Positions 1,603-33,830 of a stretch of 34,503 bases of DNA are shown piece by piece. Source of the stretch: Macrostomum lignano (Eukaryota); the NCBI GenBank assembly GCA_002269645.1, contig NIVC01004810.1, positions 1 to 34,503 on the forward strand, given 5' to 3'. How positions within the stretch are numbered: the stretch's first letter is position 1; each line of letters opens with the position of its first letter. Position numbers and translations under genes: made by a program. The notes below the pieces were generated by a model that was not told the DNA's origin, did not search any database, and was given only the letters and a program-made list of their open reading frames with translations.

Positions 1603-1672
1603 GAGCTCGTAGCCCAGTGGTCTAGCGCGGCGCTATTATGTGTCGGCGGCCCAGGCTCGATTCCAAGTGCAG
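1603..1672 (+). mobile_element. tRNA-derived SINE-like head (Pol III A and B boxes)
   Basis: A-box TAGCCCAGTGG at 1610-1620 and B-box-like GGCTCGATTCC at 1654-1664. No acceptor stem pairing. Homologous to 3307-3376 on the minus strand. Confidence 0.5.
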
Positions 1673-2053
1673 GTACAAGGTATATTGATCTCGGGCTAAA
1701 TTAGAATCTCCGTTTGGGTCTGCTCGTGCAATCAACGCCATTGAAAGCCAACCACCAAGACAAAGTAAAGTGTACATGCCTAACGTTAAATAAAGTTATG
1801 TCCGCTGTACACTCCTGTGTGAGTGGGCGCCTTCTCAGGGAAGTCGGTAAAATGGGCAGTAATGCCTCTCGCCGGTTGTGTGACAATGTCGCTTAAAGTG
1901 CACCAGGGTGCACACAGCCCCCCTGTATGTACTGCCTGTAATGTTACCTCTTTTGCCAGAGGCTGTCTCCATGTACACTTCGAAGCGGGTCTATGTAAAT
2001 CCTTTTGCGCTTAGATTGCTCACTTTTCCCGTCTCTCTCTCCCTGTCTTCCAG

Positions 2054-3190
2054 GTCCGCATCGCCACGGATCACCTGTTGCCAAAGCAGCTGAGCCAGCA
2101 CGGTCTCGAGCCCGGCTCCGTGTTGCTAAGAGAAGCTGAACTGTTGCGCGTCATCGACGCCTACACTCGGGAGGCCGGGGTGCGCCAGCTGGAGCGTCGG
2201 CTGGCCCGCCTGTGCCGCCACACCGCCCTGCTGGCAGCGGAGGCCCCGCCTAGCGAGCCGCTACGCGTCGATGCCGACGTGCTGCGCCAAATATTCGAAG
2301 AGGCCGACGGCGCCGATTGCCGGCCGACGCCGAGTCCGTACGAGCAGATGACGATGTCGGCGGCGAATTCCGGCGCGCCGTTGGAGCCCGGCGTCTGCCG
2401 GTGCTGGCCGTGACACCTCACGGCGGCGAAGTCCTGCTGTTAGAGTGCGGCTGGACACTGGAGCCGGCTGTCGATGGCGGCGGGCAGACGACGGACTTGG
2501 CGCCAGTCTGCACCGGACAGGTGAGTGACAGCTCTGCTGGATGTGGAGAACTTTTTTTACTCCATAAATTAACTTTATTACATTACACAATTCCAGTTGC
2601 TCATTACAGAATCCTACTTGCTCATTACACAATCCCCAATTGCTCATTATACAATACCGCAGGTAGGCGAGGTCATGCGCGAGTCGGTAACTCTGTGCAT
2701 CAGCTGGCTCAGCTCCAGGCTCAACTCCCAGCTCCGTCGCAATCGCCGCCGTCTGCACGTACACTTCCCGTCTGGCGCTGTGCCAAAAGACGGCACCTCG
2801 GCCGGTTTGCCGTTGGCCGCGGCGCTGACCTCCCTGGCCAGCGGCACCCCAGTCCGGGCTGGGGTCGCCCTGACTGGCGAGGTGACTCTCCGCGGCCGGG
2901 TGCTGGCGATCGGCGGCGTGCCGGCCAAGCTGGAGGCGGCCGCCCGGGCCGGCCTGCACTCGGTGGTGCTGCCGATGGCCAATCGGATTGAAGCAACTCG
3001 GACGGCTGGGCGGCTCGGCCTGGCCGGCCGCCTGCGGCTGCACTGCGTGGAAACTGTGGACCAGGCTCTGCGCTTTGCCCTGGAACCCCCCGCCGGGCAT
3101 CGGGGCTTGGGCGACTGGCCAGCTTTGCCCATCAAAGATGAGGATTCCACAGAGGATAGGGAAGCCTTGACTGCTCGGCCGAAGCTTTGA
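2054..3190 (+). CDS. LONP2: Peroxisomal Lon protease (LONP2-like), last two exons: 2054-2520 and 2663-3190; upstream exons not in window or not recognised; one apparent 1-nt deletion near 2398-2400
   Basis: HLLPKQL and YTREAGVRQLER (end of the AAA+ module), GV..VLAVTPHGGEVL, TGQ|VGEVMRES across a GTGAGT..CAG intron (2521-2662). Catalytic Ser motif PKDGTSAG and Lys motif GGVPAK. The C-terminus ends ARPKL*, a PTS1-like tripeptide. Confidence 0.9.
2581..2660. repeat. Intronic tandem repeat, ~21-22-bp unit (TGCTCATTACACAAT...), about 4 copies
   Basis: Seen directly inside the LONP2 intron. Confidence 0.7.
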
Positions 3191-3306
3191 ATGTGCTGGC
3201 CACAGATACAATACTTCACTGCGCCTTGGGGAGGTTGGCTCTCAAGGCCGTTAATTGCACGAGCAGAGCCAAGCCGAGATTCCAATTAAGCTCCAAATTA
3301 ATGTGA

Positions 3307-3376
3307 CTGCACTTGGAATCGAGTCTGGGTCGCTGGCACACCAGAGCAGCTGCGCTACCGCTGGGCTACGGCCCCC
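3307..3376 (-). mobile_element. tRNA-derived SINE-like head, second copy of the family at 1603-1672
   Basis: The reverse complement reads GGGGGCCGTAGCCCAGCGGTAGCGC...CCCAGACTCGATTCCAAGTGCAG. It shares TAGCCCAG.GG and CCCAG.CTCGATTCCAAGTGCAG with the plus-strand copy. Confidence 0.55.
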
Positions 3377-4240: not shown

Positions 4241-4851
4241 GAGAGTGAGATTCTGAATTTCAGAGAGTGACTGCAGAGAGTGAGATTCTGAGAGTGACTG
4301 GAGAGACTGACATTCTAAGAGTGACTGGAGAGAGTGAGATTCTGAGAGTGACTGCAGAGAGTGAGATTCTGAGAGTGACTGCAGAGAGTGAAATTCTAAG
4401 AGTGACTGCAGAGAGTGAGATTCTGAGAGTGACTGCAGAGAGTAAGATTCTGAGAGTGGCTGCAGAGAGTAAGATTCTGAATTTTAGAGAGTGACTGCAG
4501 AGAGTGAGATTCTGAGAGTGGCTGCAGAGAGTGAGATTCTGAATTTCAGAGAGTGACTGCAGAGAGTGAGATTCTGAGAGTGGCTGCAGAGAGTAAGATT
4601 CTAAGAGTGACTGGAGAGAGTGAGATTCTAAGAGTGACTGGAGAGAGTGAGATTCTAAGAGTGACTGGAGAGAGTAAGATTCTGAGAGTGGCTGCAGAGA
4701 GTAAGATTCTGAATTTCAGAGAGTGACTGCAGAGAGTGAGATTCTGAGAGAGTCTGCAGAGAGTAAGATTCTGAATTTCAGAGTGAGATTCTGAGAGTGG
4801 CTGCAGAGAGTGAGATTCTGAGAGAGTCTGCAGAGAGTGAGATTCTGAGAG
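4241..4851. repeat. Minisatellite, 27-bp unit GAGAGTGACTGCAGAGAGTGAGATTCT, ~22 copies
   Basis: Tandem array seen directly, with GGA/GCA and AATTTC-insertion variants. Confidence 0.95.
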
Positions 4852-6776
4852 TCGCTTCTACTTCTGAGAGCTACGCTCGTACTTCTTGGCCAATGTATCG
4901 AATGGGACTGGCCATAGACAGGAGTGTGCACTCGTCATTTCCTTTCCTGCTATTTCAACCATAGATAAATTCAATTATCAATACGGTTACGCGAACTCGT
5001 AACCTTGGCACTTGAATTCTCGCTTCATATAACCTGCACTGGCAATGGGTCATGCACTCGCGATACGATAAATATGCGTTCCTCCGCCTCATTTCTAAGA
5101 AAACCGGGTGAGCGTCATTCTACTTCAGCTGTATGACCCATGCCTCTCCAGACGCTTCAGCTTATGGTGGGCCATGCGTGCTGAAAAAAATCCCCATGCC
5201 AATCATCGAAAATTTCACGATCTCTTCCTTCCTTTTCTTCATCACTGCTGCTACCTTTTCTTTTTTTAAAGTCTGATGCCTCAGCTCCGTTTCCATTGTA
5301 GCTGGACCTAAGAAGAGCCATGGTGACTTACAGTTACACCTGAGTTAACTCTGCTTAATCACGAATAGGAGACAGAAAGCGGGGGTCCCATTCAGGGTAC
5401 CTGGTAAAAGTGCATGGATTCAAGCAGATTCAGACTATAGGGGTGGCAGATCTGCAGGTTCACTTTAGCTAATTGAATCTGTCTGCCGTTCTGTCTGCCT
5501 GTCCGTCAGATCATTGTTGAAATATGAGCAGGTTTGGCGCATCAAGTCGACTACGTTCAAACTGCACAGAGAAACGCTCGACGACTGCATATACATTCAC
5601 CTTGACTGGTACGATTTCTGAAAATTGCTTTTTTCGATGTATATTTTTCTCTCTTGACTTTGAAATGTGTATCGCGTCAGAAAATGTTTAAATTTAGTTT
5701 AAATAGTGTTATACTCTGGGCTGGTTTACAGAGTTGGTATGCGAGTGTTGTGTGTGTTTAATGGGAGTAGCGAATTAGGTGAATCTGGTAAACCAGCCCC
5801 CTTAAACGCTTTACCCTTGCACTGTCACACCGTGTATCTAAAAATAGAGTTCTAACTTGAGGATTAAGCCAGACGAGATTTTGGCTTACAGTAGACAAAA
5901 AAATTAACACATCGGAACTAGAAGCCTCTCAAAGGTAGGTATGAACTCACGACAACCGGCCTTCTAAACCCTTTTTTAAGGTGTTACACTCAGCCTTCTG
6001 TGAAATAAGCTCTTGATTAGACAGATCTGTGAAGACACGTTGAAGAAAGCTTGCCTTTTGATCCAACTTTCCTGGCAGTATTTCATCTCGCTAACAGGAT
6101 TAGCCAGACCATATATCAGGTTAAGCAGAGTCAACCGTTGCACACTAAGGCTATAGCATGTCCTGTTCTTTCATCAAATTTTCCCATAGCCTGATCAAGA
6201 CATTCGGCGCGGAAAATCACTCCACATTTGAACTAGAGAAATTCACGCCTGGATCAGTGAAAAAAATCTTTAGCAAGCTTATATAAGACTCCGCAACCTA
6301 GTAATTAGAGACGCGTCTAAAAAGAACCCCAATAGTTGTTACTTCTGCTCGAAATATGCTCAACACTCCTCTGCCGCCCACTGTCTCTCTGTCTCTCCGT
6401 AATTTGGTTTTCTTCGACAAAAATAGACACAGCCAGGCCCAGGTTGCCATGCAGTGATTTATGAGGCTGGCCCGCCGGCTTTCCGCGTCGCTAGCGATTT
6501 TTCTTTCGACCTGAATGATACAATACCATCAGGCCGAGGACAAGGGTGTATTAGAAAGATCGGGAACTTCAACACGATTAACCTTGTTTAGACTTGAGTG
6601 GAAGTTCGTTTCTTGTATTGTATATAGTGAAACACGAATTTTTTCACTTTCCAGCAGAAGTTCCAAATTGTCAAAGTTTGGTTCATGGACAACTGAGTTG
6701 GAATGATGCTACAGTCGGTTTTCTTAGAAATTGAGCTGGAGGCTGGTAAGGAGAGCGCGTATTTGTCGCATCGCTA

Positions 6777-11578: not shown

Positions 11579-14500
11579 ATGGCGTTAGCTGCGGCGGTCA
11601 GCTTCTGTATTGGCCTGATCTGCCTAACGGCTGGTTCATCTTACGGCGCATCGATTCGTTGCACATTCGACGGGGTGCAGATTCCTGTTAATGACACGTA
11701 CACGTATCTTCAAGGCTGCCACGAGATTACCTGCGTCTGCGATCCCAACCTGCAGCAGATGTGCAAGAGTGTGCCGAGTGAGTATCTACGAATTATCTTC
11801 ATGTATCTACCTATGAACTGCTCACTGCTCTACCTATGCTCTACCTATGAACTGCTCACTAAAAACTGCTCTACCTATGAACTGCTCTAATTCTATTCAC
11901 TAAACCTCATCCATAGAGGGCTGTCTGCATCCGCTGGGCACATGCGTGGACGAGAATGCGCGCTACGAAATGAACACAACGCGAGGAGTTCACGAGTGCA
12001 TCTGTCGGAGAGAGATAGACGGCAAGAGTCTTGTCGGAACTGAGTGCACTATCAGTGAGTAGCACTCTTTTAAGCTGTACCGTATCTTCTAAGCTCTTAT
12101 GGGTTATCATAAAAGCTCGTTGCAGCTTCCACTCTGTCTGCTTCAACAATTAGCCTCTAGACTATCATCTGACATCAAAGTCGAAGTCGAACAAGCTTTG
12201 CAAGAAGAATTCGGATTTCAAACTCTGGAATCATTCTTCTCATCGCTTTATTGCATCTTTGCCGTGATCAAGTAGAACCACAATTAGAATTCAATGGCTG
12301 TATTCCTTGCCTAGTTGTCTCGCTCACTGCAGCGGAAGTATTCTGCTTGACTTCTTCCCAGGGTATTTTCAAACTATGACTTGCTTTTTAGTCTTTACAA
12401 ACATCAGTAAGAATTTTTTGGGGAAGGGGGGCATCACAAACCCGAAAAATCACAACTCCGAAATATCATAACTTTAAAATTGCTAGCAATGTCCTTTTCG
12501 CTTTCGGAGTTATGGAGTCCGTTAATGATCACTTCTGTCCTGTACCCACTAGAGCGATGTCTGGACGTTGACGGCACGTACAAAAGCGTCGGCGAGCGAG
12601 TCACCGTGTCGCTTAGCGGCACATTGTTTGAGTGCACCTGCGGCGGCCGCATGGATTATTGCAACTGTTCGACTTTGGAGTCGATTCGTAACGCTGACAA
12701 ATGCCTGGACGTCAATGGGCATTACATCCAGTCTGGTCACCGGGTTGTTACGCAAAGTGAAAATGGTGAATTTCTAATTTGCACTTGTCGCGGCAGTTCC
12801 GGTTACTCTGACTGCATGACCCAGGCCGAGTACGACCATCAGGATATGTGCCAGGGCAAGGACCACCAGTGGGTTACCAAGGGCAGCGAATTACGGATCG
12901 AATTTCAAGGCGATGATTACATCTGTCGGTGCAACGGTACCAACAAGCACGCCGGATGTCGCCTAGCAGACGAGGACGCGAACAAGTACCGGGGCCGCTG
13001 CCAAGACTACCATGGCCGGTTGGTTAAGGCTGGCGGCTACGTTCGGATTCTTCGCGGCGGTGCTGTGTTCGTCTGCCACTGCACTGGTACGAACACACAC
13101 GAGGGCTGCCTAACGGAGCAGGCTTTTTCGCACAGAGATGACTGCATCGATCTTAGCGGTGGCTATGTTAAGCGCGGCCGACTGGTGCGTATTCTCAACA
13201 ACGAGAACGTGATTGTTTGCACCTGTAAAGGCTCGTCAGGTTATTCGGACTGCCAGTCAGAGCAGGATTATAGCACGCGAAATCAATGCAAAGGTGCCGA
13301 TGGAAAATTTGTATCCAAGGGCCGCAAAGTACGAATAGTCAGCGAGGGTATAAGCTACGTTTGCCACTGCGCTGGAGCGGCAGGCTACAAGAACTGCTTG
13401 ACAGAGGAGGCTTACATGAACAAGGGCAAGTGCAAGGACGTAAACGGGCAGTATGTTGACAGAGGCAAAGAAGTCGTGGTGTTTCACCACAGCATCCTGT
13501 ATCAGTGTAAATGCATTGGAACCAACAGGTACCAGCAATGCAAGGACTACAACGCGATCGTCAACGCTGATAAATGCAAGAACTACAACGATACTTACGT
13601 AGAGGCGGGACAGATTGTGGTAATTAAAAGCTCCACAAATACAACTTTTTACTGTGAGTGCATGGGCAGCCAAGGATATAAAAACTGCTTGACTAAAGAA
13701 ATATTCGACAATATCAACAGATGTCAGAGTGCTAACGGTTCCTACGTTGAAATAGGCGAGGTTGTAGAATACAAGGTGTCAGGAACCATCTACGTTTGCG
13801 AGTGCAACGGGACAAACAAGTACAAAGATTGTGTATCAAAAGATGCATATTTGAATCGCGACCGATGTCGAGATGTCGACGGCAAGTATGTCGGCCGAGG
13901 TGAAGCAGTCCGAGTGTTGTCAGGTACCGAAGTCTACATTTGCCAGTGCCACGGTAGTAAAGGCATCGCCGAGTGCATGAGCAACGAAACTTACTACCAT
14001 CGAGGCATGTGCAAGGACCTGGAGGGAAACTTCCTTCCAAAAGGCGAGAAGATCTCTATTGAGCAGAATGAAATCATCTATGTCTGCGATTGCATCGGCA
14101 ATAACACTTACAAAAACTGTAAGACAATAGAGGCATTTCAAAACGCTGGCCGTTGCAAAGGACACAACGGATCTTACACAGATATTGGCGAGCCTGTAGC
14201 TGTAAAACATGATAATTATATTTTTGTGTGTATCTGCAATGGCACGAATAATTACATTCAATGTATGCTCGAGGAGACATGGAACAACCAAAATAAGTGC
14301 AAAGACATAGATGGAATTTATGTTAGCGAAGATGAACTCGTCAAGCATCAAGTAGGGGCCAAAATTTATGTTTGCCACTGCAAAGGAACAAATAAGTATG
14401 CTAACTGCGTTCCACAGGACGTCTTCAATAATCGCGGAAAGTGCCGCGATCGTGATGGAGATTACGTAGAACCTGGAAAGAAGGTCCGAATACGTCACGG

Positions 14501-16479
14501 AAAAAGGCGCTACGTTTGCGATTGCGAAGGTGAGAATCTCTACAAACAATGCGTCACTGAAGATCAATTTGAGAACAGAGAAAATTGCATTGGTAGCGAT
14601 GGTGAATATGTACTTCTGGATGAGAAGGTAAAGGTTGAAGTAGAGCAGGAATCATACGTGTGCACCTGCAAGGGAGCAATGGGTTATAGCGACTGTGTGA
14701 GTGAAGAATCGCTGCTACATAAGGACCAGTGCAAGGATGCTGTTAGTAAGAACTATTCAAAACGAGGTGAGAAAGTGCGGGTCCGGTGCGAGAAACAAAG
14801 TATTATCTTCATATGCGAATGCGCCGGCTCTAATCAGTACCGAAACTGCGTGACGGAGTTGAGCGTTAAAAACCAAGGCAAATGCAAAGATAAAAACGGC
14901 ACGTTTGTTCCGCAGGGCCAGCTTGTTCGGCACATCGTCTCTGAGACTTTGTATGTATGCAACTGCGGCGGCACAAATAGGTACCTGGACTGCATGACCG
15001 AGACGCAGTACAACAACAGACACAAGTGCCGTGGCATGGATGAAAACTACGTCGAGGAAGGTCAAATGGTAGTTGTTAAGTCCGGAGCAGACGTATTTGT
15101 TTGCATTTGCAACGGTAGCGACGGAGTCAGGAATTGTGTGACAAACGAGACTTATCACAATAGGGACAAGTGCCGTGACCTTCATGGTAACTACGTTGGA
15201 AAAGGTGAAAAAGTTTCAATTGAGCGCGAAAATCAAATTTACGTTTGCAATTGCGGAGGCAATAATGCTTATAAGAACTGCCAAACATTAGAGGCATTTG
15301 AAAACAATGGCCGTTGTAAAGGTTACAATGAGTCGTACGTGGACGCGGGAGAGCCTGTTGTCGTGAAGCAAGACCAGTACACCTATGTATGCATTTGCAA
15401 CGGTACAAACAAATTTGTTCAGTGCATGCAAGAGGAGGTCTGGAGAAATAAGAACAAATGCAGAGATATCGATGGTAGCTACGTTGAAGAGGATGATCGA
15501 GTAAATTACCGGTACAATAATCAAATCTACGTTTGTCGTTGCAAAGGAACAAACAGGTACGCCGACTGTGTCACCAAAGAGGCTTTTGAAAACCAAGGCA
15601 AATGCCGAGCAAGTGACGGCAGCTATGCTGCACCGGGACAAACCGTCCGTGTTGAGCATGGAGGCAAGGCGTACATCTGCTTATGCGAAGGTCACAATCA
15701 GTACGGCAAGTGCATGACTGAAGAGACTTACGCTAATCGTGAGAGGTGCAAGGGCAGCGATGGTATCTATGTCGACAAGGGACAGAAAGTAAAGGTCAAT
15801 GTTGAGCACTTGGTATACGTGTGCGTCTGCAAAGGCCAAATGGGCTACAGTGATTGTGTAACAGAGGAGTCCTTAATGCATCAGGACCAGTGCAAGGACG
15901 TGGTTAGCGGGGAATTCATTAGTAAAGGGGACAACGTACGAATACGGTGCGATCAGAAAAGTGCTGTATTTGTCTGCGAATGTATTGGCACCGATCAGTA
16001 TAGAGGATGCGTGACGGAGGAGAGCATAAAGAACAGAGGCAAGTGTAAGGACGACAATGGCACATACGTATCTCAAGGACAAAATGTGGCGAGAACAGCC
16101 GATGGCAAAACCTACATTTGCGTGTGCCAGGGCACAAACAACTATGGCAACTGCATGACGGAGGAGGACTACGTGAATCGGGATAAGTGCAAGGATCATC
16201 GTAGTGGGAGGTACATTGACTACGGGGACACCGTGACAGTGCTATACGCCGGCAAAGTTTGGATCTGTGTATGCGCTAAAGGTCCGCAGTACACCCAGTG
16301 CCAACCGGAGGCGACGGAGGAAGACTCGAATACGTCTGGTTTGTAAGGACAAGCACGGCAATTGGATAAAGGCTGGGGATTACTACAAGATCATGTCGAG
16401 AGGCGTCGCCTACAGCTGCCGATGCAAAGGCAACAATGTTGCTGTTGACTGCGAATGTAAGCTGGGCGGTTGCGTCTGA
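11579..16479 (+). CDS. Large secreted cysteine-rich protein (~1,420 aa) with ~29 tandem 4-Cys FN1-like/half-VWC modules; exons 11579-11777, 11917-12054, 12553-16479 (apparent frameshift near 16341)
   Basis: Signal peptide MALAAAVSFCIGLICLTAGSSYG. Two GTGAGT..TAG phase-1 introns keep the frame. There are 26 modules of ~48 aa (C-x~24-CxC-x8-C) in the long ORF and a 27th in the next frame ending at TGA 16479, plus one module in each of exons 1 and 2. No transmembrane segment is visible. Confidence 0.85.
11807..11887. repeat. Intronic repeat CTACCTATGAACTGCTC, ~4 imperfect copies
   Basis: Seen directly in intron 1 of the FN1-like gene. Confidence 0.7.
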
Positions 16480-20000: not shown

Positions 20001-20262
20001 TCGAACTGAAAAAGTTGATGGCCTTCAGCAAGGAGGCGCTCAACAGCTCGACTAGTTGGCTGCAGCTCGAGGACAGCGAGAGCAGCGCTGGATTGCCGCG
20101 CAGGCAGATCAGGCAGATGGCGGCTGGCGAGTCGCCGCTGCAGTTGGCGCTCAGACAGAGAAATTCTGTAAAGCCGCTGGCCAGGACTTGCAGATCGGCG
20201 TCCGGAATGTCCTGTGTGTCCAGCAAGACTATGATGACTCTGCTGGGACTGCTTTGGTGGGC
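17078..20262 (-). CDS. M1AP: Meiosis 1 associated protein (M1AP)-like; exons 20262-19592, 18060-17690, 17537-17078; start exon not found; apparent 1-nt deletion near 20009-20013
   Basis: Colinear motifs against human M1AP as recalled: SPSRVIIV~QPPRLLIV, ALAIAEQQVK~AVEDGLQQFK, AELCLLT~LEITILT, LRAWL~FKAWL, SEVVLNPGLL~QERLLCPSLL, FGWPVLIRP~YGLPFILRP, YFALGPTEHL..DDLLLP~FYVIMPSHSL..RELMLP. GT-AG introns have matching phases (0 and 2). Confidence 0.8.
18206..19004. mobile_element. 761-bp non-coding insertion (18225-18985) flanked by a 19-bp target-site-like direct repeat; probable non-autonomous non-LTR retroelement in an M1AP intron
   Basis: TTGAGCTCCG[T/A]GGTAACCA at 18206-18224 and 18986-19004. 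A (TTAG)n tail at ~18970-18985. GC-richer than the flanks and no convincing ORF. Confidence 0.7.
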
Positions 20263-20855
20263 CTTAAATGTGTGAGCAAACGAGTAAAATATTACACAGA
20301 GTTAAATAATTTGTATTACTTTTAGGCTAAATAATATTATGTTATCAGATGCAGTAAGCTTAAGTAAATATTCAATGAAAAAAGATTAAAAAAACGAGTA
20401 TTTCCATTGTTATAGAGGGAAATTAATAATAGTGAATATTGCAAAACTGTATTAATTGTCATTTAGGTCATGCGAAAACAATCTGTCTTAGTTAGGGAGC
20501 CTGTGCATTTTTATTTAGTAAGAAAAGATTGAACATTTAACTATCAGTAGTTATTAAAATATTCGAAAATTTAAAATTTATAAAATCAAATAAGTTTATA
20601 TGGTGTCTAAGAAGCATTTTTATTAGAAAAGCATGGTAAGCAATAACCAAATTAATGTTATGATACAGTATTATAGCTTTTAAGTATCAAAACATGAAAA
20701 TTTCAGTTTAAAATAATTTATCAAAATTAAATTGCTTTCGAATATATGCTCTATTGAAAAATTATAGTTTTAAAGCATACAAAATTGAAAAAACTAAATA
20801 CTCAATGCTCAACTCATTAATTAATTTTAAAATTGTTAATTAATTTAAGGAAGTG

Positions 20856-20908
20856 TGGCACTCTCTTCAGCGCCACATAGCCTGGCAAGTGTAGCAGTCG
20901 AATTTTGC
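20856..20908. other. 53-bp copy of M1AP coding sequence (19736-19788) embedded in AT-rich DNA
   Basis: 51/53 identical, same orientation, offset 1120 bp. Both differences are CG>CA. Confidence 0.9.
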
Positions 20909-22546
20909 AATTTTGTGCAATTTGCAATTTTATGAAAATTGCAATAATTGCAATAATTGCAATAATATTAATAATTTTAAAATTGCCAAACCATGCCAAA
21001 GCATATAAATTATGCAATATACTCATATGTTTCAATATATACCATTAAGGGTATAAACTATGTAAAACTAAATATTCTGAAGTACTATGAAAATTAATTT
21101 TGAAATAAAAATCTTAGAATAGCACACTTGTTTTTAAAACTGTGGCAAGTGTAGCCAGTGGACAATACTTCAAGCTTCACAACTGAGAAAATAAATGAAA
21201 GAGGATGTAAAATTTGAATACAGAACTGCACACTTTTATAAGAATAAAAATGGTAATCATGCAGGTATAGTAAAACTAACTGTTAAACTTTTAAAATGTA
21301 GCCAGCCATACTACAACATTTAACATATCAGTTTATGGTCTCATAAAAGTTTCAGCCATTTCATATCAGCAGTAGCTTCAGAAACAAGTACTGGTGAGCC
21401 AGCACGGCTAAAGCAAGAGTCAAAAACAACCAGCAAATTTACATGGCATAAAGTAAATATACATAACAGTACAATTAAAAATCCAAATTTGCATAACTGG
21501 TATGACTGCCCATACAAAAAGTGCATTCTATGGTCCTGCAGAGTATCAAAACATTTTAACTCTTTAATAGTAAATAGATATAGATTTTAGTATATTGGAT
21601 TATCATGATTAAAGTTGCGCGTGTGTGAAATTTGCAGATCGCCAGTGTCGTCTTTTTTCTTTTCGTTTCTAATTACAAGCATTTTTTTAATTTTTAAGTT
21701 TTTTTTGTAAAAAGTATGTCCTACGTTTAAATTTCTGGTTAATCTTTTTAGCAAAAGAGTTGGCTTTGTTTAATGATGCGGATTCCGGGCTTTTTAAAGA
21801 ATCGAACTCTGAGAAAGTGATTTGTTCCATTTGTTACAAGTTTCTAATGTGGACTCTACGAGGTTGCTGTTTAGATAAAATTGTACTAGCGCTTACAATT
21901 TTATTTAAGCGACATTAAAATATAACTCAAACAGTAATACAGCGATATTGAGAAAAATGACCAAGAAGTAAAAGTTGTACCAAGTCTTTTAACGTCGTCG
22001 CTGTATTTGTGCAAATTTGGTCGTAAAGCGAGCAATATATCATTGGTTTTCCTCCTTATGGGATTTAAATAAGATGCATAAGAGCTAGGGACTAAAACTG
22101 TTGCGTTTTTTATTTTATGCAGCTTTAAAGCTTTTAAAACTGAGATCAAGCACGGAATTTACATGTAAATATAGTTGGCCATGACTAATGGCGCAAGAAA
22201 TAATAAAATATTTAGTCCTTTACAAGAAAATATTGATATACAGACAATACTAAGCTGCTAGAGTGAAAGCCACTCCTTTAAAAATTAATCCTGTATTGGC
22301 GTGGCAATGCATATTTCTAAGCACTTAGCCCAAATATTTGTTTTTACCTAACTATTTATCTCAATATGGGCCACGTAACATACGAAATCGTCGGCGTGGA
22401 AATTTTGAAGAGAAAATTTAAATCCACAGATTTTATTTTATTTTTTCTATTAGTTAAACATACTGAGTAATGGCAGTGGGCCACCATGGCAGTGCAGTCC
22501 TATCGATAGACTAGGCATATTGAACAGTATTATCTGAGTTTAAACG

Positions 22547-24227
22547 TATAAACTATGCATTTTGTTTGATATTATTTAATTAAATTAACTGGTATAAAAG
22601 TTAGGCTAAGGCAATGTCTTTAGACTTTAGTGTTTGTTGTAGTTATATAGATATAGAAACTCAGAGCATACAAAATTATTACCACTCAGCCAGACTCATT
22701 TTGGTATTATGATAATTAAATTAGGCCCTAGCTACTTTATTAGGCCTAACTCTTTGGACAGTTTTTATCATGCATTTGTTTGAAATTGCCAGTTGTTAAT
22801 GTTAATTCAATTATTTTGTATAAGGTACTTTTTTAAAATTCTATTTTATAGTCTTTCTTAGAATACTTTATATAGGGTTTATATCTAAAGACTTTGATAA
22901 TGATAGCTAGTTTAATATAGGTTAGGCTATATCATACATACATAATACCCAGCCAACCTAGCCAATCTAGCTAGCTGACAAGGGGCCCAGCCCCTTGCCA
23001 AGGTAAGTTACAAAAATTCCCACCCAAAAAGTATAGATGTAGTACTTATTAGATGATTAAACAATTTAGCTTTAATAATATAGTCATAGTAGGCTAGTTA
23101 GACCTTTTCTTATTATTCATCCAAAATTATATTAATTTTTGCTTACCTTAGCTTAGGTTTTTTATAGGTAAGTCACAATTTTTGTCAAAAAGTAAGTTGT
23201 ATGGCCAGTGTAAATCAGGGTGTTACTATTATATATATATATAAATGCATTATATATTATATTTTGTATTAGTATTTGAAAGGCAAAGTTTTACTATAGC
23301 TCATAACTGGAATTTACTTATATGTGTCTATAGCCATATCTAACTTTTCCTATTACTGAATCTATATTAATATCTAAAGACTATATCTACATCTATAGTT
23401 ATTAAATTTTCTATATCTTCCTATAACTTTTAATGATATTAAAGCTAGTGATAACATGAATAAATAAAAGATAAATAAATTCCTAATTCTTAAGGTCTCA
23501 AAGCAAATAATCAATCTTATTATCATAGGCTTTTTTATCTAAAACTATTTTTATTATAACTGTATCTCATTAAAATCTTATTGCTTGAATTCTTGACCTA
23601 GGACTTTAGAGATCCTTTGATTTAAAATGAAAACATTCATCTGAACTATAGCTCTTATTATCTTTGTAATAAAATTTAACATAAAAAACCTTGGTAGCTT
23701 AAGTATTCCAACCTAAAGAGATTTATAGTTCCTCTTATAATAGCTTTCAAATAGGCAATATTTATTTACTTTCACTTCTATTGTTCTACTCCTACCTACC
23801 AAATCAATAATTTTAATGGTCTTTCAAGTCTTAGTTATTGAATGGCAAATATTATTTGATCTAGGACCCTAGCTTAGCTTAGACACTATCTAGGGTCAAG
23901 AACCTATATTTTATTTGAAATATAGCTTTTATTTGAAATCTGACATTTTATTGTCAGTAACAATTGACTTTCTAGCCTTAATGTTAACTTTTCTTATTAC
24001 AATCAAGTACCTTTATATAGCATGTTAGAAATATAAATAGCCAACTACTCATAGTAGTAAACAATAAAAAACTGCTTATCTCAAAAAAATTTATCCCAAA
24101 AATGGGCCTTACTATAACATACCAGTTCAACATTGTATAATAATTGTTATACATATATATTCATAAACAAAAAATTATAACAAGACCAAACATTGAAAAA
24201 CTTAATTAAAATTCAAAGGATATCATT
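22547..24227. other. AT-rich, CpG-free, TA-rich block containing mutated copies of nearby satellites
   Basis: No CG dinucleotide found by eye in 1,681 nt. Decayed copies of the 30-bp and 17-bp satellites at 23865-23904 and 23941-23990. Confidence 0.8.
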
Positions 24228-24292: not shown

Positions 24293-27200
24293 ATGACTGA
24301 ATCAGATGACAATTTGACAGCTAAACAAGCTGATGAAAGTGGTGAAGGTAGGCTGTCATCTCTATCAGGACTGCAACCATCGCAACAAATTGAATTTGAA
24401 GGTTAGTAAACTGTACTACTCTAATAAACCAGATGCCTAGACAATGTTTAAATGTGTCTGTTCTAACCTGCGCACCTTTAATTCCTTTGAATGCCTGCAG
24501 ACTGCCTATCCGAGCTATTGGCTAATTTGACTAAATCGCAGGCAAAATGTTTAAATCGAATGCGAAGATTTGAATGGCCAGCGTCTGTTCGTAAGTTGAT
24601 ATTATGATTTATGAATATGCTGGGCGATTGAGGGATTAGCGACTAGTGAAGCAGCAAAATAAGGGATTAGCGACTAGTGTAGCATCAGACTGAGGGATTA
24701 GCGGCTGCTGAAGCATCAGAGTGAGGTATTAGTGGCTACTGGAGCATCAGACTGAGGGATTAGCAGCTACTGAAGCATCAAGAGTGAGGGATTAGCGGCT
24801 GCTGAAGCATCAGAGTGAGGTATTAGTGGCTACTGGAGCATCAGAGTAAGGGATTAGCGGCTGCTGAAGCATCAAGAGTGAGGGATTAGCGGCTGCTGAA
24901 GCATCAAGAGTGAGGGATTAGCGGCTGCTGAAGCATCAAGAGTGAGGGATTAGCGGCTACTGAAGCATCAAGAGTGAGGGATTAGCGGCTACTGAAGCAT
25001 CAGAGTGAGGGATTAGCGGCTACTGAAGCATCAAAGTGAGAGATTAGCGGCTACTGAAGCACCGATAAAGAGAATTAGGTAATAAATAAAAAGAAACATT
25101 CACAAAAGCATCTAACTAGGCCCCAAGCATTTCCTACACGTGCTCCCTCACCGCAGCCTGGCTAATGTCTCTGTCCTGTCGAACCTGCGAAGATGCCGAA
25201 CAAATATTACGCCGATTGCGTCGTCGTTTCGCCGCCGTTGCGTCTACCATTGGCGCATCTGACAGCGCAGATACAGGAGATGAGTCAGCTAGAGCCGGCC
25301 TCCCAGCCGAGTTAAGAGGCCTCGAACAATGCCTTAGCGTTGAACTGACTGCGGCAATGCAGAAATATCAATGTAAGTAGCTCCAATGACAGGAAATTAG
25401 AGTGCCTATCTACTAAATCAGGGGTCGGCAAACCTAGCGCATGACTGCGGGCAACATTGAGCGGGCTGAATTGCTATTGTGAAGTTTATTTAATATTTTT
25501 TTCGCATTTTTGTCAGCCGGGGAGATACCTGCTGGCGGCAGCCTGTTAGACAGTCCCGGTCGGCTATCCCGCCTCAACTGCGCCCGGGCTCGACGGTCTC
25601 AGTTCGCCGCCGCTGCCGCCTCCGCCTCCTCCTTTTCTGCTGAGTCCCCAGTGTCCGCCCCAGGCCTGTTGAGCGCGCTGCCAGATTCCACCTATTCGCT
25701 GTTGTGCTCCGTGTCCGATCTGCTAATTAATCTCTGGCTGTCTGCTGCCAATCAGCACGGTGAGCTGGGCTTTCTGGGAAATTTTTATCTTCTAGAAGAT
25801 TTTCATTCGGGTTTAGGGCAATTTCACTGTCAGTGACAATTGACTGTCAGGACGACAATTGACGGTCAGTGACAATTGACGGTCAGTGACAATTGACGGT
25901 CAGTGACAATTGACGGTCAGTGACAATTGACTGTCAGTGACAATTGACTGTCAGGACGACAATTGACGGTCAGTGACAATTGACTGTCAGTGACATTTGA
26001 CTGTCAGTGACATTTGAATGTCAGTGGTAATTTATTTTACTGTCAAGGTGACATTTGACTGTCAGGGTGACAATTGACTGTCAGTGACAATTGACTGTCA
26101 GTGACAATTGACTGTCAGGGTGACAAACAACTGTCAGTGACATTTGAATGTCAGTGACAATTGACTGTCAAGGTGACAACTGTCAGTGACAATTAACTGC
26201 CAAGGTGACAATTGACTGTCAGGGAGATAATTAACTGTCAGTGACATTTGACTGTCAGGGTGACAATTGACTGTCAGTGACAATTGACTGTCAGGGTGAC
26301 AAATAACTGTCAGTGACATTTGAATGTCAGTGACTTTTGAATGTCAGTGACAATTGACTGTCAGTGACAATTGACTGTCAAGGTGACAACTGTCAGTGAC
26401 AATTAACTGCCAAGGTGACAATTGACTGTCAGGGAGATAATTAACTGTCAGTGACAATTGACTGTCAGGACGACAATTGACGGTCAGTGACAATTGACGG
26501 TCAGTGACAATTGACTGTCAGTGACGACGGTCAGTGACAATTGACTGTCAGTGACATTTGACTGTCAGTGACATTTGACTGTCAGTGACATTTTACTGTC
26601 AGTGACATTTGACTGTCAGTGACATTTGAATGTCAGTGGTAATTTATTTTACTGTCAAGGTGACATTTGACTGTCAGGGTGACAATCGACTCAGTGACAT
26701 TTGACTGTCAGGGTGACAAATAACTGTCAGTGACATTTGAATGTCAGTGGTAATTTATTTTACTGTCAAGGTGACATTTGACTGTCAGGGTGACAATTGA
26801 CTGTCAGTGACAATTGACTGTCAGTGACAATTGACTGTCAGGGTGACAAATAACTGTCAGTGACATTTGAATGTCAGTGACTTTTGAATGTCAGTGACAA
26901 TTGACTGTCAGTGACAATTGACTGTCAGTGACAATTGACTGTCAGTGACAATTGACTGTCAGGGTGACAAATAACTGTCAGTGACATTTGAATGTCAGTG
27001 ACTTTTGAATTTCAGTGACAATTGACTGTCAGTGACACTTGACTGTCAGGGTGACAACTGTCAGTGACAATTAACTGCCAAGGTGACAATTGACTGTCAG
27101 TGACATTTGACTGTCAACCCTAGCCCAAACGCTAACGTTAACTTAAATCGTCGACATCTTTTAGTATTCGACACCTTTTACTTGTATCTTTTTACTCGGA

Positions 27201-30200
27201 TTGTTCAGTGTTTAACGCTTTCTCCTTGTTGTCCAGGTCCAGCAGAAATCATTACTATTGATGAGGTGAATATCTAATATATTTTAAGGCATTGAATATG
27301 AAACAACTGAGGTATGTCTTTAATCCATTTTTAGTCCCGTTTGCCGGTTATTTGTGAGTCATCCTGAACCCAGTAGTTATCATAGTCTGTAACTAAATTT
27401 TTATCACCAATCGATGGCGGGTATATCTGCATTATACTACTGTTTAGAAGTAGTGTTTTTGCATACTTCACAAACTCATTCTATAAGCCTGCTTGAATTT
27501 CTGTGGGCGCGTGGTTGTCACTGCTTTTAGTCAGCCCTTAATGTCGCTTTTAGGGTCATATAACTCCACCTTAGATATGCTTTTAAAATCATGGCCCATT
27601 TTGGGTTCTGTTTTTTGACATAACCCCACCTCAGACACAATGTCTAGGGTCGAAACCCCAGCTCAGACACTGTCTAGGGTCGAGACCCCAGCTCAGACAC
27701 TCTAGGGTCAAGACCCCAGCTCAGACACTGTCTAGGGTCAAGACCCCAGCTCAGACACTGTCTAGGGTCGAGACCCCAGCTCAGACACTGTCTAGGGTCG
27801 AGACCCCAGCTCAGACACTGTCTAGGGTCGAGACCCCAGCTCAGACACTGTCTAGGGTCGAGACCCCAGCTCAGACACTGTCTAGGGTCGAGACCCCAGC
27901 TCAGACACTGTCTAGGGTCGAGACCCCAGCTCAGACACTGTCTAGGGTCGAGACCCCAGCTCAGACACTGTCTAGGGTCGAGACCCCAGCTCAGACACTG
28001 TCTAGGGTCGAGACCCCAGCTCAGACACTGTCTAGGGTCGAGACCCCAGCTCAGACACTGTCTAGGGTCAAGACCCCAGCTCAGACACTCTAGGGTCGAG
28101 ACCCCAGCTCAGACACAATGTCTAGGGTCGAAACCCCAGCTCAGACACAATGTCTAGGGTCAAGACCCCAGCTCAGACACTGTCTAGGGTCAAGACCCAG
28201 CTCAGACACAATGTCTAGGGTCGAAACCCAGCTCAGACACTGTCTAGGGTCAAGACCCCAGCTCAGACACTCTAGGGTCGAGACCCCAGCTCAGACACTC
28301 TAGGGTCGAGACCCCAGCTCAGACACTGTCTAGGGTCAAGACCCCAGCTCAGACACTCTAGGGTCAAGACCCCAGCTCAGACACTCTAGGGTCAAGACCC
28401 CAGCTCAGACCCTCTAGGGTCGAGACCCCAGCTCAGACACTCCATGGTCGAGACCCCAGCTCAGACCCTCTAGGGTCAAGACCCCAGCTCAGACACTCTA
28501 GGGTCAAGACCCCAGCTCAGACACAGGTGTCTCCAATGGTGCACAATGCTTTCTATGGTCACCTATCCGCCTTAGACTCTGTTCAAAGCTTCACGCCACC
28601 CTAAGCAATGTATAGTAGATATCACATCACATTGCATAGTCCTCCAACCTACTCAATCCAGAGGGCCCACGCGCGGTTTGGACGAGCAGCCGGCGCTGGT
28701 ATCTGCGCTGCCTCGCTGACGCGGGCGTAGCTTCCAGTTCTAACGGGCTGGACGGGCAATCCAGCGTTGTGGAGACTGCCAGCGGCGACAAGGATATGCG
28801 CCAGTTCGTCCGGCTGGCATTGGCGCGCTACCTGGACGCGCTGGAGGCCAACACGAAAGTTTCTAGAAAGAGGAGCGCGCCCGCTTCCATCAGCAGTTGC
28901 AGCGGGAGCGAAACGGAAGGTACAACAAATTCATTCAGTATCTTTTAATAATCACCCTTTGTGTCCTTGCATGACCCCTTAATGAACTCCAGCAATTTGA
29001 TTCAATCTTCATTAGGAATCGATCTCCTTGAAGAATCGCCCTTCGATCTCATTGAAGAATCGCCCTTCGATTTCATTTAAGAATCGCCCTTCGATCTCAT
29101 TGAAGAATCGCCCTTCGATCTCATTTAAGAATCCCTTCGATCTCATTTAAGAATCGCCCTTCGATCTCATTGAAGAATCGCCCTTCGATCTCATTTAAGA
29201 ATCCCTTCGATCTCATTTAAGAATCCCTTCGATCTCATTTAAGAATCGCCCTTCGATCTCATTTAAGAATCCCTTCGATCTCATTTAAGAATCGCCCTTT
29301 GATCTCATTTAAGAATCGCCCTTCGATCTCATTTAAGAATTCCTTCGATCTCATTTAAAAATCGCCCTTCGATCTCATTTAAGAATCGCCCTTCGATCTC
29401 ATTCAAGAATCGCCCTTCGATCTCATTTAAGAATCCCTTCGATCTCATTTAAGAATCGCCTTTGATTTCATTCATGAATCCCTTCGATCTCATTTAAGAA
29501 TCCCTTCGATCTCATTTAAGAATCGCCTTTGATTTCATTCAAGAATCCCTTCGATCTCATTTAAGAATCCCTTCGATCTCATTTAAGAATCGCCCTTTGA
29601 TCTCATTCAAGAATCCCTTCGATCTCATTTAAGAACCGTAAATAATGCTCTGACACCACTTCAACAGACCGCCGCCAGCAGCAGCAGAAATCCGAGGAAG
29701 TCCTGTACCCTGCTTCCGGCCTGTTCTGCCGCAATATTGTCATTGATTTGGGCGCGGACCGGAACGCTAGTTTGTTAGCAACTGACCAAACACCAGACAC
29801 CCGTAAAGCCGATGAGCAGGCGGAGGCCGACCGCCCGGAACCGGATAGTCAACAAGATTTTACCGAAGCCTGCGAGACTGTTGATCCGTCCAGCATTGAA
29901 CAGAACGGCGGCGCTGTACAAGACGACGAGGAGGACGACTCTTGCAGCATCGATCTGGACAATCTAGAAGTGGTTGACGACCTTGTTAACGACTGCGCTT
30001 TAAGTTTAGTGGGTCCGGAACACGTCATCGGCGGCGAGGATAGCAACGGCGCTGTTGATAAGGACGCCAGCAATGGTGAAGCCTGCATCCTGCTGGAACA
30101 GCCGTCAAGCAGCGACTGTCCCGATCCGCTGATGCGTCTAGACACTACCGACCCCAGTCAGGAGTACACCGTGCCAGCTGCCCTTGCCGATGCCTACAGC

Positions 30201-32417: not shown

Positions 32418-32910
32418 TGACCCCGACGCTGTGTCCTCATATGACCCCTTGATCGTGTCCTTGAATGACGTCTCCATCGATCATTTGACCCCTTGGCCGT
32501 GTCCTCATATGACCCCCTGATCGTATCCTTGAATGACCTCTCCATTGATGACCCCTTGGCCATATTTTCATATGACCCCTTGGCCGCGTCTTCATATGAC
32601 CCCTTGGCCGCGTCCTCATGACCCTTTCACCGTGTCCTCATATGACCCCTTCACCATATCCTAATATGACCCCTTTGATTGTCCTCTCCTCTCCATTGTA
32701 TCCTCAAATGACCCCTTGGTCGTGTTTTCATATGACCCCTTGTCCGTGTTCTCATATGACCCTTGGTCGTGTTTTCATATGACCCCTTGTCCGTGTTCTC
32801 ATATGACCCCTTGATCGTATCCTTGAATGACCTCTCCATTGTACCCTCAAATGACCCCTCCCATATTATCCTTACAAACGACCGTTCATGTTGTCCTCAA
32901 ATGACCCCAA
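32418..32910. repeat. Minisatellite, 24-bp unit TCATATGACCCCTTGGCCGCGTCC-like, degenerate
   Basis: Seen directly, downstream of the unknown gene. Confidence 0.9.
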
Positions 32911-33235: not shown

Positions 33236-33830
33236 AGAACAGGTTTTCACCCATATCTAACAGGTTTCCATCCATATCTAACAGGTTTCCACCCATATCT
33301 AACAGGTTTCCACCCATATCTAACAGGTTGTCCGCACATATCTAACAAGTTTCCACCATATCTAACAGGTTTCCACCCATATCTAACAGGGTTTCACCCA
33401 TATCTAACAGGGTTTCCGCCTATATCTAACAGGTTTCCACCCATATCTAACAGGTTGTCCGCCCATATCTAACAGGTTTCCACCCATATCTAACAGGTTT
33501 CCACCCATATCTAACAGGGTTTCACCCATATCTAACAGGGTTTCCGCCTATATCTAACAGGGTTTCACCCATATCTAACAGGGTTTCACCCATATCTAAC
33601 AGGTTTCCACCCATATCTAACAGGTTTCCACCCATATCTAACAGGGTTTCACCCATATCTAACAGGGTTTCACCCATATCTAACAGGGTTTCAACCATAT
33701 CTAACAGGTTTCCACTCATATCTAACAGGGTTTCACCCATATCTAACGGGTTCACACCTATATCTAACTGGTTTCCACCCGTAGGGTTTCCACCCATATC
33801 TAATAAATTTCCAGTATATGTAACAGGTTT
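33236..33830. repeat. Minisatellite, 21/22-bp unit CCCATATCTAACAGG(G)TTTCCA-like, ~27 copies
   Basis: Seen directly. Confidence 0.95.

What the first reader, a model, noticed from the sequence alone, without database searches (positions are those of the whole stretch)
11579..16479. Invertebrate secreted protein made of ~29 tandem fibronectin type I-like modules
Seen: a signal peptide followed only by ~48-aa modules C-x6-7-[YFWL]V-xx-G-xx-V-x-V-x7-9-CxC-x-G-x6-C. The module at 12999-13109 (CQDYHGRLVKAGGYVRILRGGAVFVCHCTGTNTHEGC) fits the PROSITE FN1 pattern as I recall it: C-x(6,8)-[LFY]-x5-[FYW]-x-[RK]-x(8,10)-C-x-C-x(6,9)-C. Established: FN1 is considered essentially chordate-specific (fibronectin with 12 copies, tPA, factor XII, HGFA) and is structurally related to the N-terminal half of the VWC domain. 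Inference: this could be an undescribed extracellular fibril, adhesive or mucus protein family, representing either a pre-chordate FN1 relative or an independent half-VWC expansion. Many N-x-S/T sites suggest heavy glycosylation.
Basis: partly seen in the sequence, partly recalled or inferred. Interest (0 to 1): 0.9.

Follow-up and report, generated by a model that had tools for sequence, protein, structure and literature searches.

The report
Secreted chain of fibronectin-type-I-like modules
This is a real, intron-containing animal gene (closest relative in the flatworm Macrostomum) for a secreted protein made only of about 29 small disulfide-knit modules that are predicted to fold like the fibronectin type I 'finger', a module so far regarded as largely confined to chordates.

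Summary
A three-exon gene (11579-16346, canonical GT/AG phase-1 introns) encodes a probable signal peptide, two 5-Cys cap modules and 26 regular 48-aa 4-Cys modules. A 29th intact module (16342-16479) lies one base out of frame behind the stop codon.

No Pfam family is significant: fn1 scores 13.5 bits against a 27-bit cut-off. A profile-profile comparison with PDB-verified human FN1 modules is in register but weak (P=1e-3). With the cysteine columns held fixed, 10 of 150 shuffles reach that score.

The fold evidence is strong. AlphaFold2 models a module pair at pLDDT 93.8, and the 17 best Foldseek PDB matches are all fibronectin F1 modules. The N-terminal cap of the Macrostomum homologue gives the same result. 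No VWC entry is in either top 50.

A module-profile search of 1.84 billion cluster representatives returned only one Macrostomum lignano gene (Mlig026500g2, 6 modules). It has the same three-exon layout.

Modules are about 35% identical. An old 7-module block duplication shows non-synonymous change well below saturated synonymous change.

Verdict: an undescribed, flatworm-restricted family with an FnI-like fold, probably an extracellular scaffold or adhesive glycoprotein. Homology to chordate FN1 versus convergence is unresolved, and the function is inferred.

The parts
11579..11777 (+). Exon 1. It holds the start codon, a probable signal peptide (aa 1-23, 11579-11647) and cap module 1 (5 Cys: C-x18-C-x4-C-x-C-x7-C). 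It ends in phase 1 before GTGAGT.
   Evidence: The intron is at the same position in the M. lignano homologue. The signal peptide is judged by eye from its hydrophobic core; no predictor was run.
11778..11916 (+). Intron 1 (GT...AG), which contains a 16-nt tandem repeat.
11917..12054 (+). Exon 2. It is a symmetrical phase 1-1 exon of 138 nt that encodes cap module 2 alone (5 Cys).
   Evidence: The homologue has the equivalent exon.
12055..12552 (+). Intron 2 (GTGAGT...CACTAG).
12553..16346 (+). Exon 3. It encodes 26 regular 48-51-aa four-cysteine modules (modules 3-28, 12558-16331), a short acidic tail and the stop codon TAA at 16344-16346.
12999..13109 (+). Module 6, from C1 to C4. It is the first module of the modelled pair.
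14010..15026 (+). Modules 13-19, the first copy of an old seven-module block duplication.
   Evidence: at an offset of 8 modules the identity is 50-68%, against about 35% otherwise.
15171..16187 (+). Modules 21-27, the second copy of the block duplication.
   Evidence: 62% nucleotide identity, pN 0.26, synonymous sites saturated.
16342..16479 (+). The 29th module plus a Cys-rich tail (CECKLGGCV) and its stop codon. It is intact but one base out of frame with exon 3. Removing one base in the GG/TTT run at 16338-16342 would join the frames.
   Evidence: 38.6 bits, E=2.4e-13. This module gave the only marginal Pfam fn1 hit.

Best explanation
This is a genuine protein-coding gene of a flatworm-like animal.

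Shown:
- The gene has three exons and encodes a protein of 1376 aa, or about 1420 aa if the 29th module is read through.
- The protein consists only of tandem small disulfide modules.

Predicted with high confidence:
- Each module adopts the FnI-like fold. A two-stranded sheet (strands A and B) packs on a three-stranded sheet (strands C, D and E). The C-x-C motif lies on strand D and C4 lies on strand E.
- An 11-residue linker between modules forms a short helix.

Inferred:
- The N-terminal signal peptide (by eye; no predictor was run), and therefore secretion.
- The disulfides are C1-C3 and C2-C4.
- The protein is N-glycosylated, often in the D-E turn (NGT/NGS).
- It forms a long, stiffened beads-on-a-string rod.
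- It works outside the cell as a structural or adhesive scaffold in matrix, mucus or another secretion.
- It probably binds partners multivalently by beta-strand addition to exposed sheet edges, as fibronectin F1 strings do.
- The odd cysteines in modules 3, 18 and 26 and in the tail are available for intermolecular cross-links.

Evolutionary placement:
- The family is confined, as far as the databases show, to Macrostomum-like flatworms. There the same capped three-exon gene carries 6 modules.
- The module array grew by internal duplication and has since been kept under purifying selection.
- It belongs to the FnI-like fold class, but it cannot be shown to be a sequence-level member of the chordate FN1 family.
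For: Gene model: canonical splice sites and consistent phases. Exon layout and intron positions are conserved with M. lignano Mlig026500g2.

Repeat: 26+1 HMM hits and no copies elsewhere. The four cysteines are invariant.

Selection: pN is 0.26 with saturated synonymous sites across the duplicated block. The DNA repeat is too diverged for Tandem Repeats Finder to detect.

Fold:
- The AF2 module pair has pLDDT 93.8 and strand order A, B, C, D, E followed by a helix.
- In Foldseek against the PDB, ranks 1-17 are all fibronectin F1, with probability 0.72-1.00. Single-module alignments cover 41 columns at rmsd 2.5-2.9 and 27-32% identity.
- The homologue's cap has pLDDT 84.7, and its best matches are again F1 pairs, with TM-scores up to 0.51.

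Sequence: human fibronectin 1F1-2F1 is the only hit of the protein's sequence search of the PDB. The aligned stretch puts C2-C4 of one module and C1-C3 of the next on the matching fibronectin cysteines. The hhalign alignment is also in register.

Distribution: only the M. lignano gene and its variants appear among 1.84 billion representatives.

Glycosylation and cysteine counts.
Against: - No sequence method reaches significance for FN1. Pfam fn1 scores 13.5 bits against a 27-bit cut-off. The PDB hit has E=0.06-0.2. hhalign gives 20% probability, and 10 of 150 cysteine-preserving shuffles reach its score.
- The tryptophan seen in most fibronectin F1 modules (strand C) is a valine here.
- The structure is predicted, from an alignment of paralogous modules only. 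AF2 was trained on F1 structures.
- Disulfide connectivity was inferred from strand register, not measured.
- No expression or localisation data were found for the homologue.
- The 3' frameshift could mean a damaged allele.
- The source species is unknown. The protein is not in the 15-billion-protein collection.
Confidence: 0.62

Rival explanations
1. The modules are true, very divergent homologues of the chordate FN1 domain. On this view the FN1 module predates chordates and survives in macrostomid flatworms as a pure FN1 polyprotein.
For: - The four-cysteine framework and G/Y positions are the same and align in register.
- FN1 structures, not any other small disulfide domain, are the top Foldseek hits for two independent models.
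- Module 2 sits on a symmetrical phase 1-1 exon. From memory, the same is true of F1 modules in vertebrate fibronectin genes.
Against: - Similarity beyond the cysteine frame is not significant.
- Fibronectins did not reach E<=0.001 in the profile search of 1.84 billion proteins.
- The family was found only in Macrostomum. Deep ancestry would therefore require losses in almost every other lineage.
Confidence: 0.25
2. The modules are an expansion of the N-terminal half of a VWC (chordin-like cysteine-rich) domain. That half has an FnI-like fold and is present across animals.
For: - Cap module 1 carries a fifth cysteine in a C-x4-C-x-C arrangement that resembles the VWC C-x2-C-x-C motif.
- The two-module cap has 10 cysteines, the same number as a VWC domain.
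- The structural kinship of FN1 and the VWC subdomain 1 is established knowledge, recalled here and not tested.
Against: - No Pfam VWC hit appears even at E<=10 for the cap, the modules or the homologues.
- There is no CC-x2-C motif.
- The cap models as two F1-like modules. No VWC entry is among the 50 best PDB matches for either model.
Confidence: 0.12
3. The protein is a multi-headed inhibitor, toxin or antimicrobial array. On this view each small disulfide module is an independent active unit, as in Kazal or antistasin polyproteins, rather than part of a scaffold.
For: - Tandem arrays of small disulfide domains are often inhibitors (general knowledge).
- The modules are only about 35% identical, with variable surfaces.
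- Copy number differs strongly between relatives: 6 against 29.
Against: - To my knowledge, no FnI-like module is a known protease inhibitor.
- There are no dibasic processing sites between modules. The linkers are conserved and partly helical, which argues for a continuous rod.
Confidence: 0.08
4. The locus is a decaying or unexpressed gene copy, with the frameshift before module 29 as its first lesion.
For: - An in-frame stop at 16344-16346 cuts off an otherwise intact terminal module.
- No matching protein or transcript is in the collections searched.
Against: - The spliced reading frame of 4131 nt is uninterrupted.
- All conserved cysteines are kept in 28 modules.
- Non-synonymous change is far below synonymous change.
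- A single-base error in a GG/TTT run is an equally good explanation of the shift.
Confidence: 0.07
5. It is an EGF-like repeat protein, as UniProt's automatic name for the Macrostomum homologues says.
For: The source names appear. Some modules contain C-x-C-x5-G-x2-C, which by my recollection fits the PROSITE EGF_1 pattern.
Against: - The modules have four cysteines, not six.
- No member of the core Pfam EGF families appears at E<=10; the only EGF-named hit is EGF_C8A_B_C6, in 1 of 27 modules at E=0.034, below significance.
- Apart from FnI-containing two-domain fragments of tPA (1tpg) and factor XII (4bdw), no EGF structure is among the Foldseek matches.
Confidence: 0.02

Closest known systems
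Fibronectin type I module (FN1/F1, Pfam PF00039), as in the 1F1-5F1 string of human fibronectin, tPA and factor XII
   Same: - About 45-aa module with four cysteines spaced C-x(20-28)-C-x-C-x(6-10)-C.
- A Gly and an aromatic residue near strand B, and G after C-x-C.
- Predicted AB + CDE double-sheet fold, with C2 opposite C4.
- Head-to-tail strings with linkers of about 10 residues.
- Secreted.
- Fibronectin F1 structures are the top structural matches.
   Different: - Below the Pfam cut-off.
- The strand-C tryptophan of most fibronectin F1 modules is replaced by valine.
- C3-C4 spacing is 8 residues, against 6-10 (mostly 9-10) in the FN1 modules.
- The linker has a conserved TEExxxN helix.
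- 29 copies with no FN2, FN3, EGF or kringle partner.
- Found in a flatworm lineage, whereas FN1 is described as chordate-specific or largely confined to chordates (PMC3308698).
Macrostomum lignano BOX15_Mlig026500g2 (290 aa; UniProt relatives A0A1I8J0D2 and A0A1I8FH02, automatically named 'EGF-like domain-containing protein')
   Same: - Same family: signal peptide, the same 10-Cys two-module cap, then regular modules.
- The same three-exon layout, with introns at the same positions.
- No Pfam domain.
   Different: - 6 modules instead of 29.
- Modules are only about 30-36% identical to the window's.
- GC-rich coding sequence.
- No Cys-rich C-terminal tail.
VWC / chordin-like cysteine-rich domain (Pfam PF00093), N-terminal subdomain
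   Same: FnI-like beta-rich subdomain held by disulfides (recalled knowledge). Cap module 1 has a VWC-like extra cysteine just before C-x-C.
   Different: - Regular modules have 4 cysteines, not 10.
- No CC-x2-C motif.
- No Pfam hit.
- No VWC structure in the top 50 matches.
Flatworm temporary-adhesion proteins (Mlig-ap1/ap2, Tmed-ap1-3)
   Same: Large, secreted, cysteine-rich, repetitive, glycosylated flatworm proteins (PMC6410801, PMC9229212).
   Different: Those proteins are built from vWD, C8, TIL, EGF, TSP1 and C-type lectin domains and long 220-330-aa repeats. None of these is present here, and no FnI-like module is reported in those papers.

Membership tests
Fibronectin type I domain (FN1, PF00039) | Scores at or above the Pfam gathering threshold (27 bits). 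| tested here: not met
   The best score is 13.5 bits (E=0.03-0.08), for module 29 only. The other 26 aligned modules (3-28) and the whole protein give no fn1 hit, and the cap gives none either.
Fibronectin type I domain (FN1, PF00039) | Four conserved cysteines in a module of about 40-45 residues, with spacing C...C-x-C...C. | tested here: met
   The four cysteines are invariant in all 27 aligned modules. Twenty-eight spacing matches were found. The cysteines align on those of fibronectin F1.
Fibronectin type I domain (FN1, PF00039) | The PROSITE-type FN1 pattern with [LFY]-x5-[FYW]-x-[RK].
   Only 1 of 29 modules (12999-13109) fits.
Fibronectin type I domain (FN1, PF00039) | Fold: a two-stranded antiparallel sheet packed on a three-stranded sheet. 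| tested here: met
   The test used predicted structures. The AF2 model has pLDDT 93.8 and strands A-E. Foldseek ranks 1-17 are fibronectin F1. The cap of the homologue gives the same result.
Fibronectin type I domain (FN1, PF00039) | Disulfides C1-C3 and C2-C4. | not testable with these tools
The DSSP hairpin register places C32 opposite C43, and C80 opposite C91. This implies C2-C4 and hence C1-C3, but it is an inference only.
Fibronectin type I domain (FN1, PF00039) | Profile-level sequence similarity beyond the cysteine frame. | tested here: inconclusive
   hhalign gives P=1e-3 and 20% probability, in register. One of 150 full column shuffles, but 10 of 150 cysteine-fixed shuffles, reach the score.
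VWC / chordin-like CR domain (PF00093) | Ten cysteines with C-x2-C-x-C and CC-x2-C motifs, and a Pfam match. | tested here: not met
   Regular modules have 4 cysteines. The cap has 10 but no CC-x2-C motif. No VWC hit appears at E<=10. No VWC entry is in the top 50 structural matches.
EGF-like domain | Six cysteines bonded 1-3, 2-4 and 5-6, and a Pfam or SMART EGF match. | tested here: not met
   There are four cysteines per module. No hit to a core Pfam EGF family; one module hits EGF_C8A_B_C6 at E=0.034, not significant.
   The profile hit has E=2.5e-35. Window module 1 is the best match of the homologue's cap module 1. Intron positions are the same.

The most novel reading that the evidence does not exclude
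The fibronectin type I module is not a chordate invention. On this reading, a homologous FN1 module existed in the bilaterian ancestor and survives in macrostomid flatworms as a protein made of nothing else. That protein would be a 29-module string that assembles or binds by the same tandem beta-zipper mechanism as the N-terminal domain of fibronectin.
Probability: 0.22. Interest if true: 0.82.

Novelty: new variant of a known kind. Interest (0 to 1): 0.6.

Why it matters
FN1 is one of the few extracellular modules treated as a chordate novelty, tied to the rise of fibronectin matrices and the clotting and fibrinolysis proteases (PMC3308698). A protostome family with the same predicted fold and cysteine frame means one of two things. 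Either the module is older than thought, or the fold has been reached twice. Both options can now be tested with a concrete sequence.

The protein is also a natural case of a very long, pure string of such modules. That is useful for studying how F1-type strings stiffen, bind extended peptides and cross-link. It also adds a candidate component of flatworm matrix, mucus or adhesive secretions, whose composition is poorly known.

Tried and rejected
- **Whole-protein homology search.** The search of the 5.8-billion-cluster collection found nothing at E<=0.001. Exact look-ups of five alternative products were all absent, so the source species could not be named.
- **Placing the species by the neighbouring Lon protease.** This gave only about 45% identical bacterial or metagenomic hits and no flatworm hit.
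- **Pfam scans.** Scans of the protein, every module, the spliced cap and the homologues gave no significant family.
- **Spurious profile hits.** A CDGSH-type protein (P0004) and a low-complexity protein (P0005) were judged by eye from the sequences and rejected.
- **Expression data for Mlig026500.** The identifier is not in any full text. It is not in the supplements of four Macrostomum papers.
- **Literature search for 'fibronectin type I' plus Macrostomum.** It returned only fibronectin type III mentions.
- **Known flatworm adhesion proteins.** They have a different domain make-up.
- **Adding the window's exon-2 module to the cap alignment.** MAFFT misaligned it, so it was left out.
- **A very short intron as an explanation of the 3' frame shift.** Rejected, because the only GT...AG candidates there span about 9-14 nt.
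- **Other scans.** tRNA and Rfam scans of the window found nothing.
Full report
**What is in the sequence**

The region holds a eukaryotic gene on the + strand. An ATG at 11579 opens an exon that ends in phase 1 at 11777, before GTGAGT. A 138-nt phase 1-1 exon follows at 11917-12054. After a 498-nt intron, a 3794-nt exon runs from 12553 to a TAA at 16344-16346. The spliced frame is 4131 nt and encodes 1376 aa.

The first 23 residues (MALAAAVSFCIGLICLTAGSSYG) look like a signal peptide. That is judged by eye; no predictor was available.

An HMM built from the repeat units finds 26 consecutive in-frame modules between 12558 and 16331, each with E of 1e-15 to 1e-21. It finds one more intact module at 16342-16467 in a frame shifted by one base. 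It finds nothing else on either strand of the 34.5-kb window. Exons 1 and 2 each encode one divergent five-cysteine module.

Loss of one base in the GG/TTT run at 16338-16342 would join the frames. This may be an assembly error or a recent lesion.

**Anatomy of the repeat**

- The period is 48 aa in 20 of 25 intervals, and 49-51 aa in the rest.
- Four cysteines are invariant. The consensus is CKDxxGxYVxxGxxV-x8-YVCxCxGxNxYxxC, followed by the linker xTEExxxNxxx.
- Modules are on average only about 35% identical. Tandem Repeats Finder sees no repeat at the DNA level, so the array is old.
- Modules 13-19 and 21-27 are a later block duplication, with 50-68% aa identity and 62% nt identity. Across that block, non-synonymous difference is 0.26 per site while synonymous sites are saturated. 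This indicates purifying selection on a working protein.
- The mature protein is about 152 kDa with a pI of 6.4 and 8.6% Cys. It has 20 N-x-S/T sequons, by my count about ten of them at or next to the turn after C-x-C.
- It has 117 cysteines, an odd number. Single extra cysteines sit in modules 3, 18 and 26, and the out-of-frame tail adds CECKLGGC.

**Is it FN1? Sequence tests**

- Pfam gives nothing significant for the protein, for each module, for the spliced cap or for the homologues. The best fn1 score is 13.5 bits against a cut-off of 27, and only for module 29.
- The single hit of a sequence search of the PDB is the human fibronectin 1F1-2F1 pair, at E=0.06. The aligned stretch puts C2-C4 of one module and C1-C3 of the next on the corresponding fibronectin cysteines. 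The module profile gives E=0.2 for the same chain.
- I recalled the human F1 and tPA finger sequences and verified them against PDB chains: fibronectin 1F1-9F1 and the tPA finger as far as its F1 module were identical, and 11F1 matched apart from one flanking residue. I aligned 11 of them and compared the two profiles.
- hhalign aligns them in register, with P=1e-3 and 20% probability.
- Only 1 of 150 full column shuffles reaches that score. When the cysteine columns are kept in place, 10 of 150 do.
- Sequence similarity beyond the cysteine frame is therefore not established. By the family's own sequence criterion, this is not a member.

**Is it FN1? Structure tests**

AlphaFold2 was run on a module pair (modules 6-7), with the other 24 overlapping pairs as the alignment. 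It gives mean pLDDT 93.8. Each module has five strands in the order A, B, C, D, E, followed by a short helix in the linker.

Foldseek against the PDB returns fibronectin F1 entries at ranks 1 to 17, with probability 0.72-1.00 and best E of 1.2e-3. TM-scores for pairs are low (0.3-0.44), presumably because the angle between modules differs. Single-module alignments cover 41 columns at rmsd 2.5-2.9 and 27-32% identity.

The two-module cap of the Macrostomum homologue was modelled independently from a four-sequence alignment and reaches pLDDT 84.7. It again matches F1 pairs best, with TM-scores up to 0.51. No VWC-domain entry is in either top 50.

I could not read coordinates, so disulfide geometry was not measured. 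The hairpin register in the DSSP string does put C2 directly opposite C4 (residues 32/43 and 80/91). That leaves C1 for C3, which is the FN1 pattern. This step is an inference.

**Relatives and source**

A search of 1.84 billion cluster representatives with the module profile found five proteins at E<=0.001. Three are versions of one Macrostomum lignano gene (BOX15_Mlig026500g2, 290 aa); two of these are garbled models. The other two are spurious. A 73% identical transcript comes from sequencing run SRR28338165.

The Macrostomum protein has a signal peptide, the same 10-cysteine cap and four regular modules. Its gene has the same three exons, with introns at the same residues. Its modules are about 30-36% identical to the window's.

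The window's own protein is absent from the collection. The neighbouring Lon protease has no close flatworm match. The source is therefore not an annotated M. lignano sequence. I take it to be a related flatworm, species unknown.

**How it probably works**

Shown:
- An animal gene under purifying selection whose product has no transmembrane segment.
- A product made only of tandem disulfide modules.

Predicted:
- An FnI-like fold and a semi-rigid beads-on-a-string shape.

Inferred by analogy with fibronectin's F1 strings:
- A multivalent extracellular scaffold that binds extended partners by adding a strand to exposed sheet edges.
- Possible cross-linking through its unpaired cysteines.
- Glycans on the D-E turns.

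Which secretion or matrix it belongs to is unknown. The large difference in copy number between relatives (6 against 29) is typical of secreted structural or adhesive repeat proteins. It does not discriminate further.

**Comparison with what is known, and novelty**

The closest known module is FN1, which is described as chordate-specific or largely confined to chordates (PMC3308698).

The present family shares with FN1:
- the cysteine frame;
- the predicted fold;
- the head-to-tail arrangement.

It differs from FN1 in:
- failing the Pfam threshold;
- lacking the strand-C tryptophan of most fibronectin F1 modules;
- having a helical conserved linker;
- occurring alone, 29 times;
- being found in flatworms.

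The VWC and EGF readings failed their defining features. The known flatworm adhesion proteins have other domains.

I file this as a new variant of a known kind: a new FnI-like-fold family. Whether it is homologous to chordate FN1 or convergent is open. The very narrow distribution argues mildly for a lineage-specific origin.

**Scores**

- Interest is 0.6.
- The strongest reading not excluded is that FN1 predates chordates. I give it about 0.22 probability; it would deserve about 0.8 interest if true.

Noticed in passing
window 2040-3190 (+): These are the last exons of a Lon protease: Lon_lid at E=1e-16 and Lon_C at E=4e-38, split by an intron at about 2521-2661. The stretch is 64% GC and the protein ends in PKL, a possible peroxisomal signal. 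The best database matches are bacterial or metagenomic Lon at about 45% identity. No animal or flatworm hit is among the top 120.
   Followed up: partly
window 1632-1756 and 3230-3347: A pair of inverted repeats of about 120 nt (80-81% complementary) flanks the Lon exons. The sequence looks tRNA-derived by eye (SINE- or MITE-like), but ARAGORN and Rfam report nothing.
   Followed up: partly
window 29748-32204 (+): An 818-aa open frame contains about 25 copies of a 33-nt unit (30599-31410) encoding P/T/S/A-rich repeats (TTPSEPPSAP...). It looks mucin-like, has no Pfam match, and lies 13 kb downstream of the module gene.
   Followed up: partly
window 4241-4856, 24629-25061, 25826-27116, 27623-28524, 29019-29635, 32548-32859, 33238-33780: The window is unusually rich in minisatellites, with periods of 17-54 nt and up to 73 copies.
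   Followed up: no
window 20001-24000: A long AT-rich stretch (25-34% GC) contrasts with exons of up to 64% GC elsewhere in the window.
   Followed up: no
window 16338-16346: The in-frame stop is created by what looks like a one-base excess in a GG/TTT run. It cuts off an intact 29th module and a Cys-rich tail (CECKLGGCV). The tail could act as a dimerisation or cross-linking end, as the C-terminal cysteines of fibronectin do.
   Followed up: partly
window modules 3 (12558-12701), 18 (14730-14882) and 26 (15891-16043): Each of these modules has a single extra cysteine, which makes the mature cysteine count odd (117). Modules 18 and 26 are duplicates and carry the extra cysteine at the same strand-C position, together with a 3-residue insertion.
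   Followed up: no
P0002 and P0003 (M. lignano protein models); L001 10080-12062: Two database proteins of the family are frame-shifted or fused gene models: low-complexity N-termini and scrambled modules. UniProt's 'EGF-like domain-containing' name for the family probably comes from a short cysteine pattern match.
   Followed up: partly
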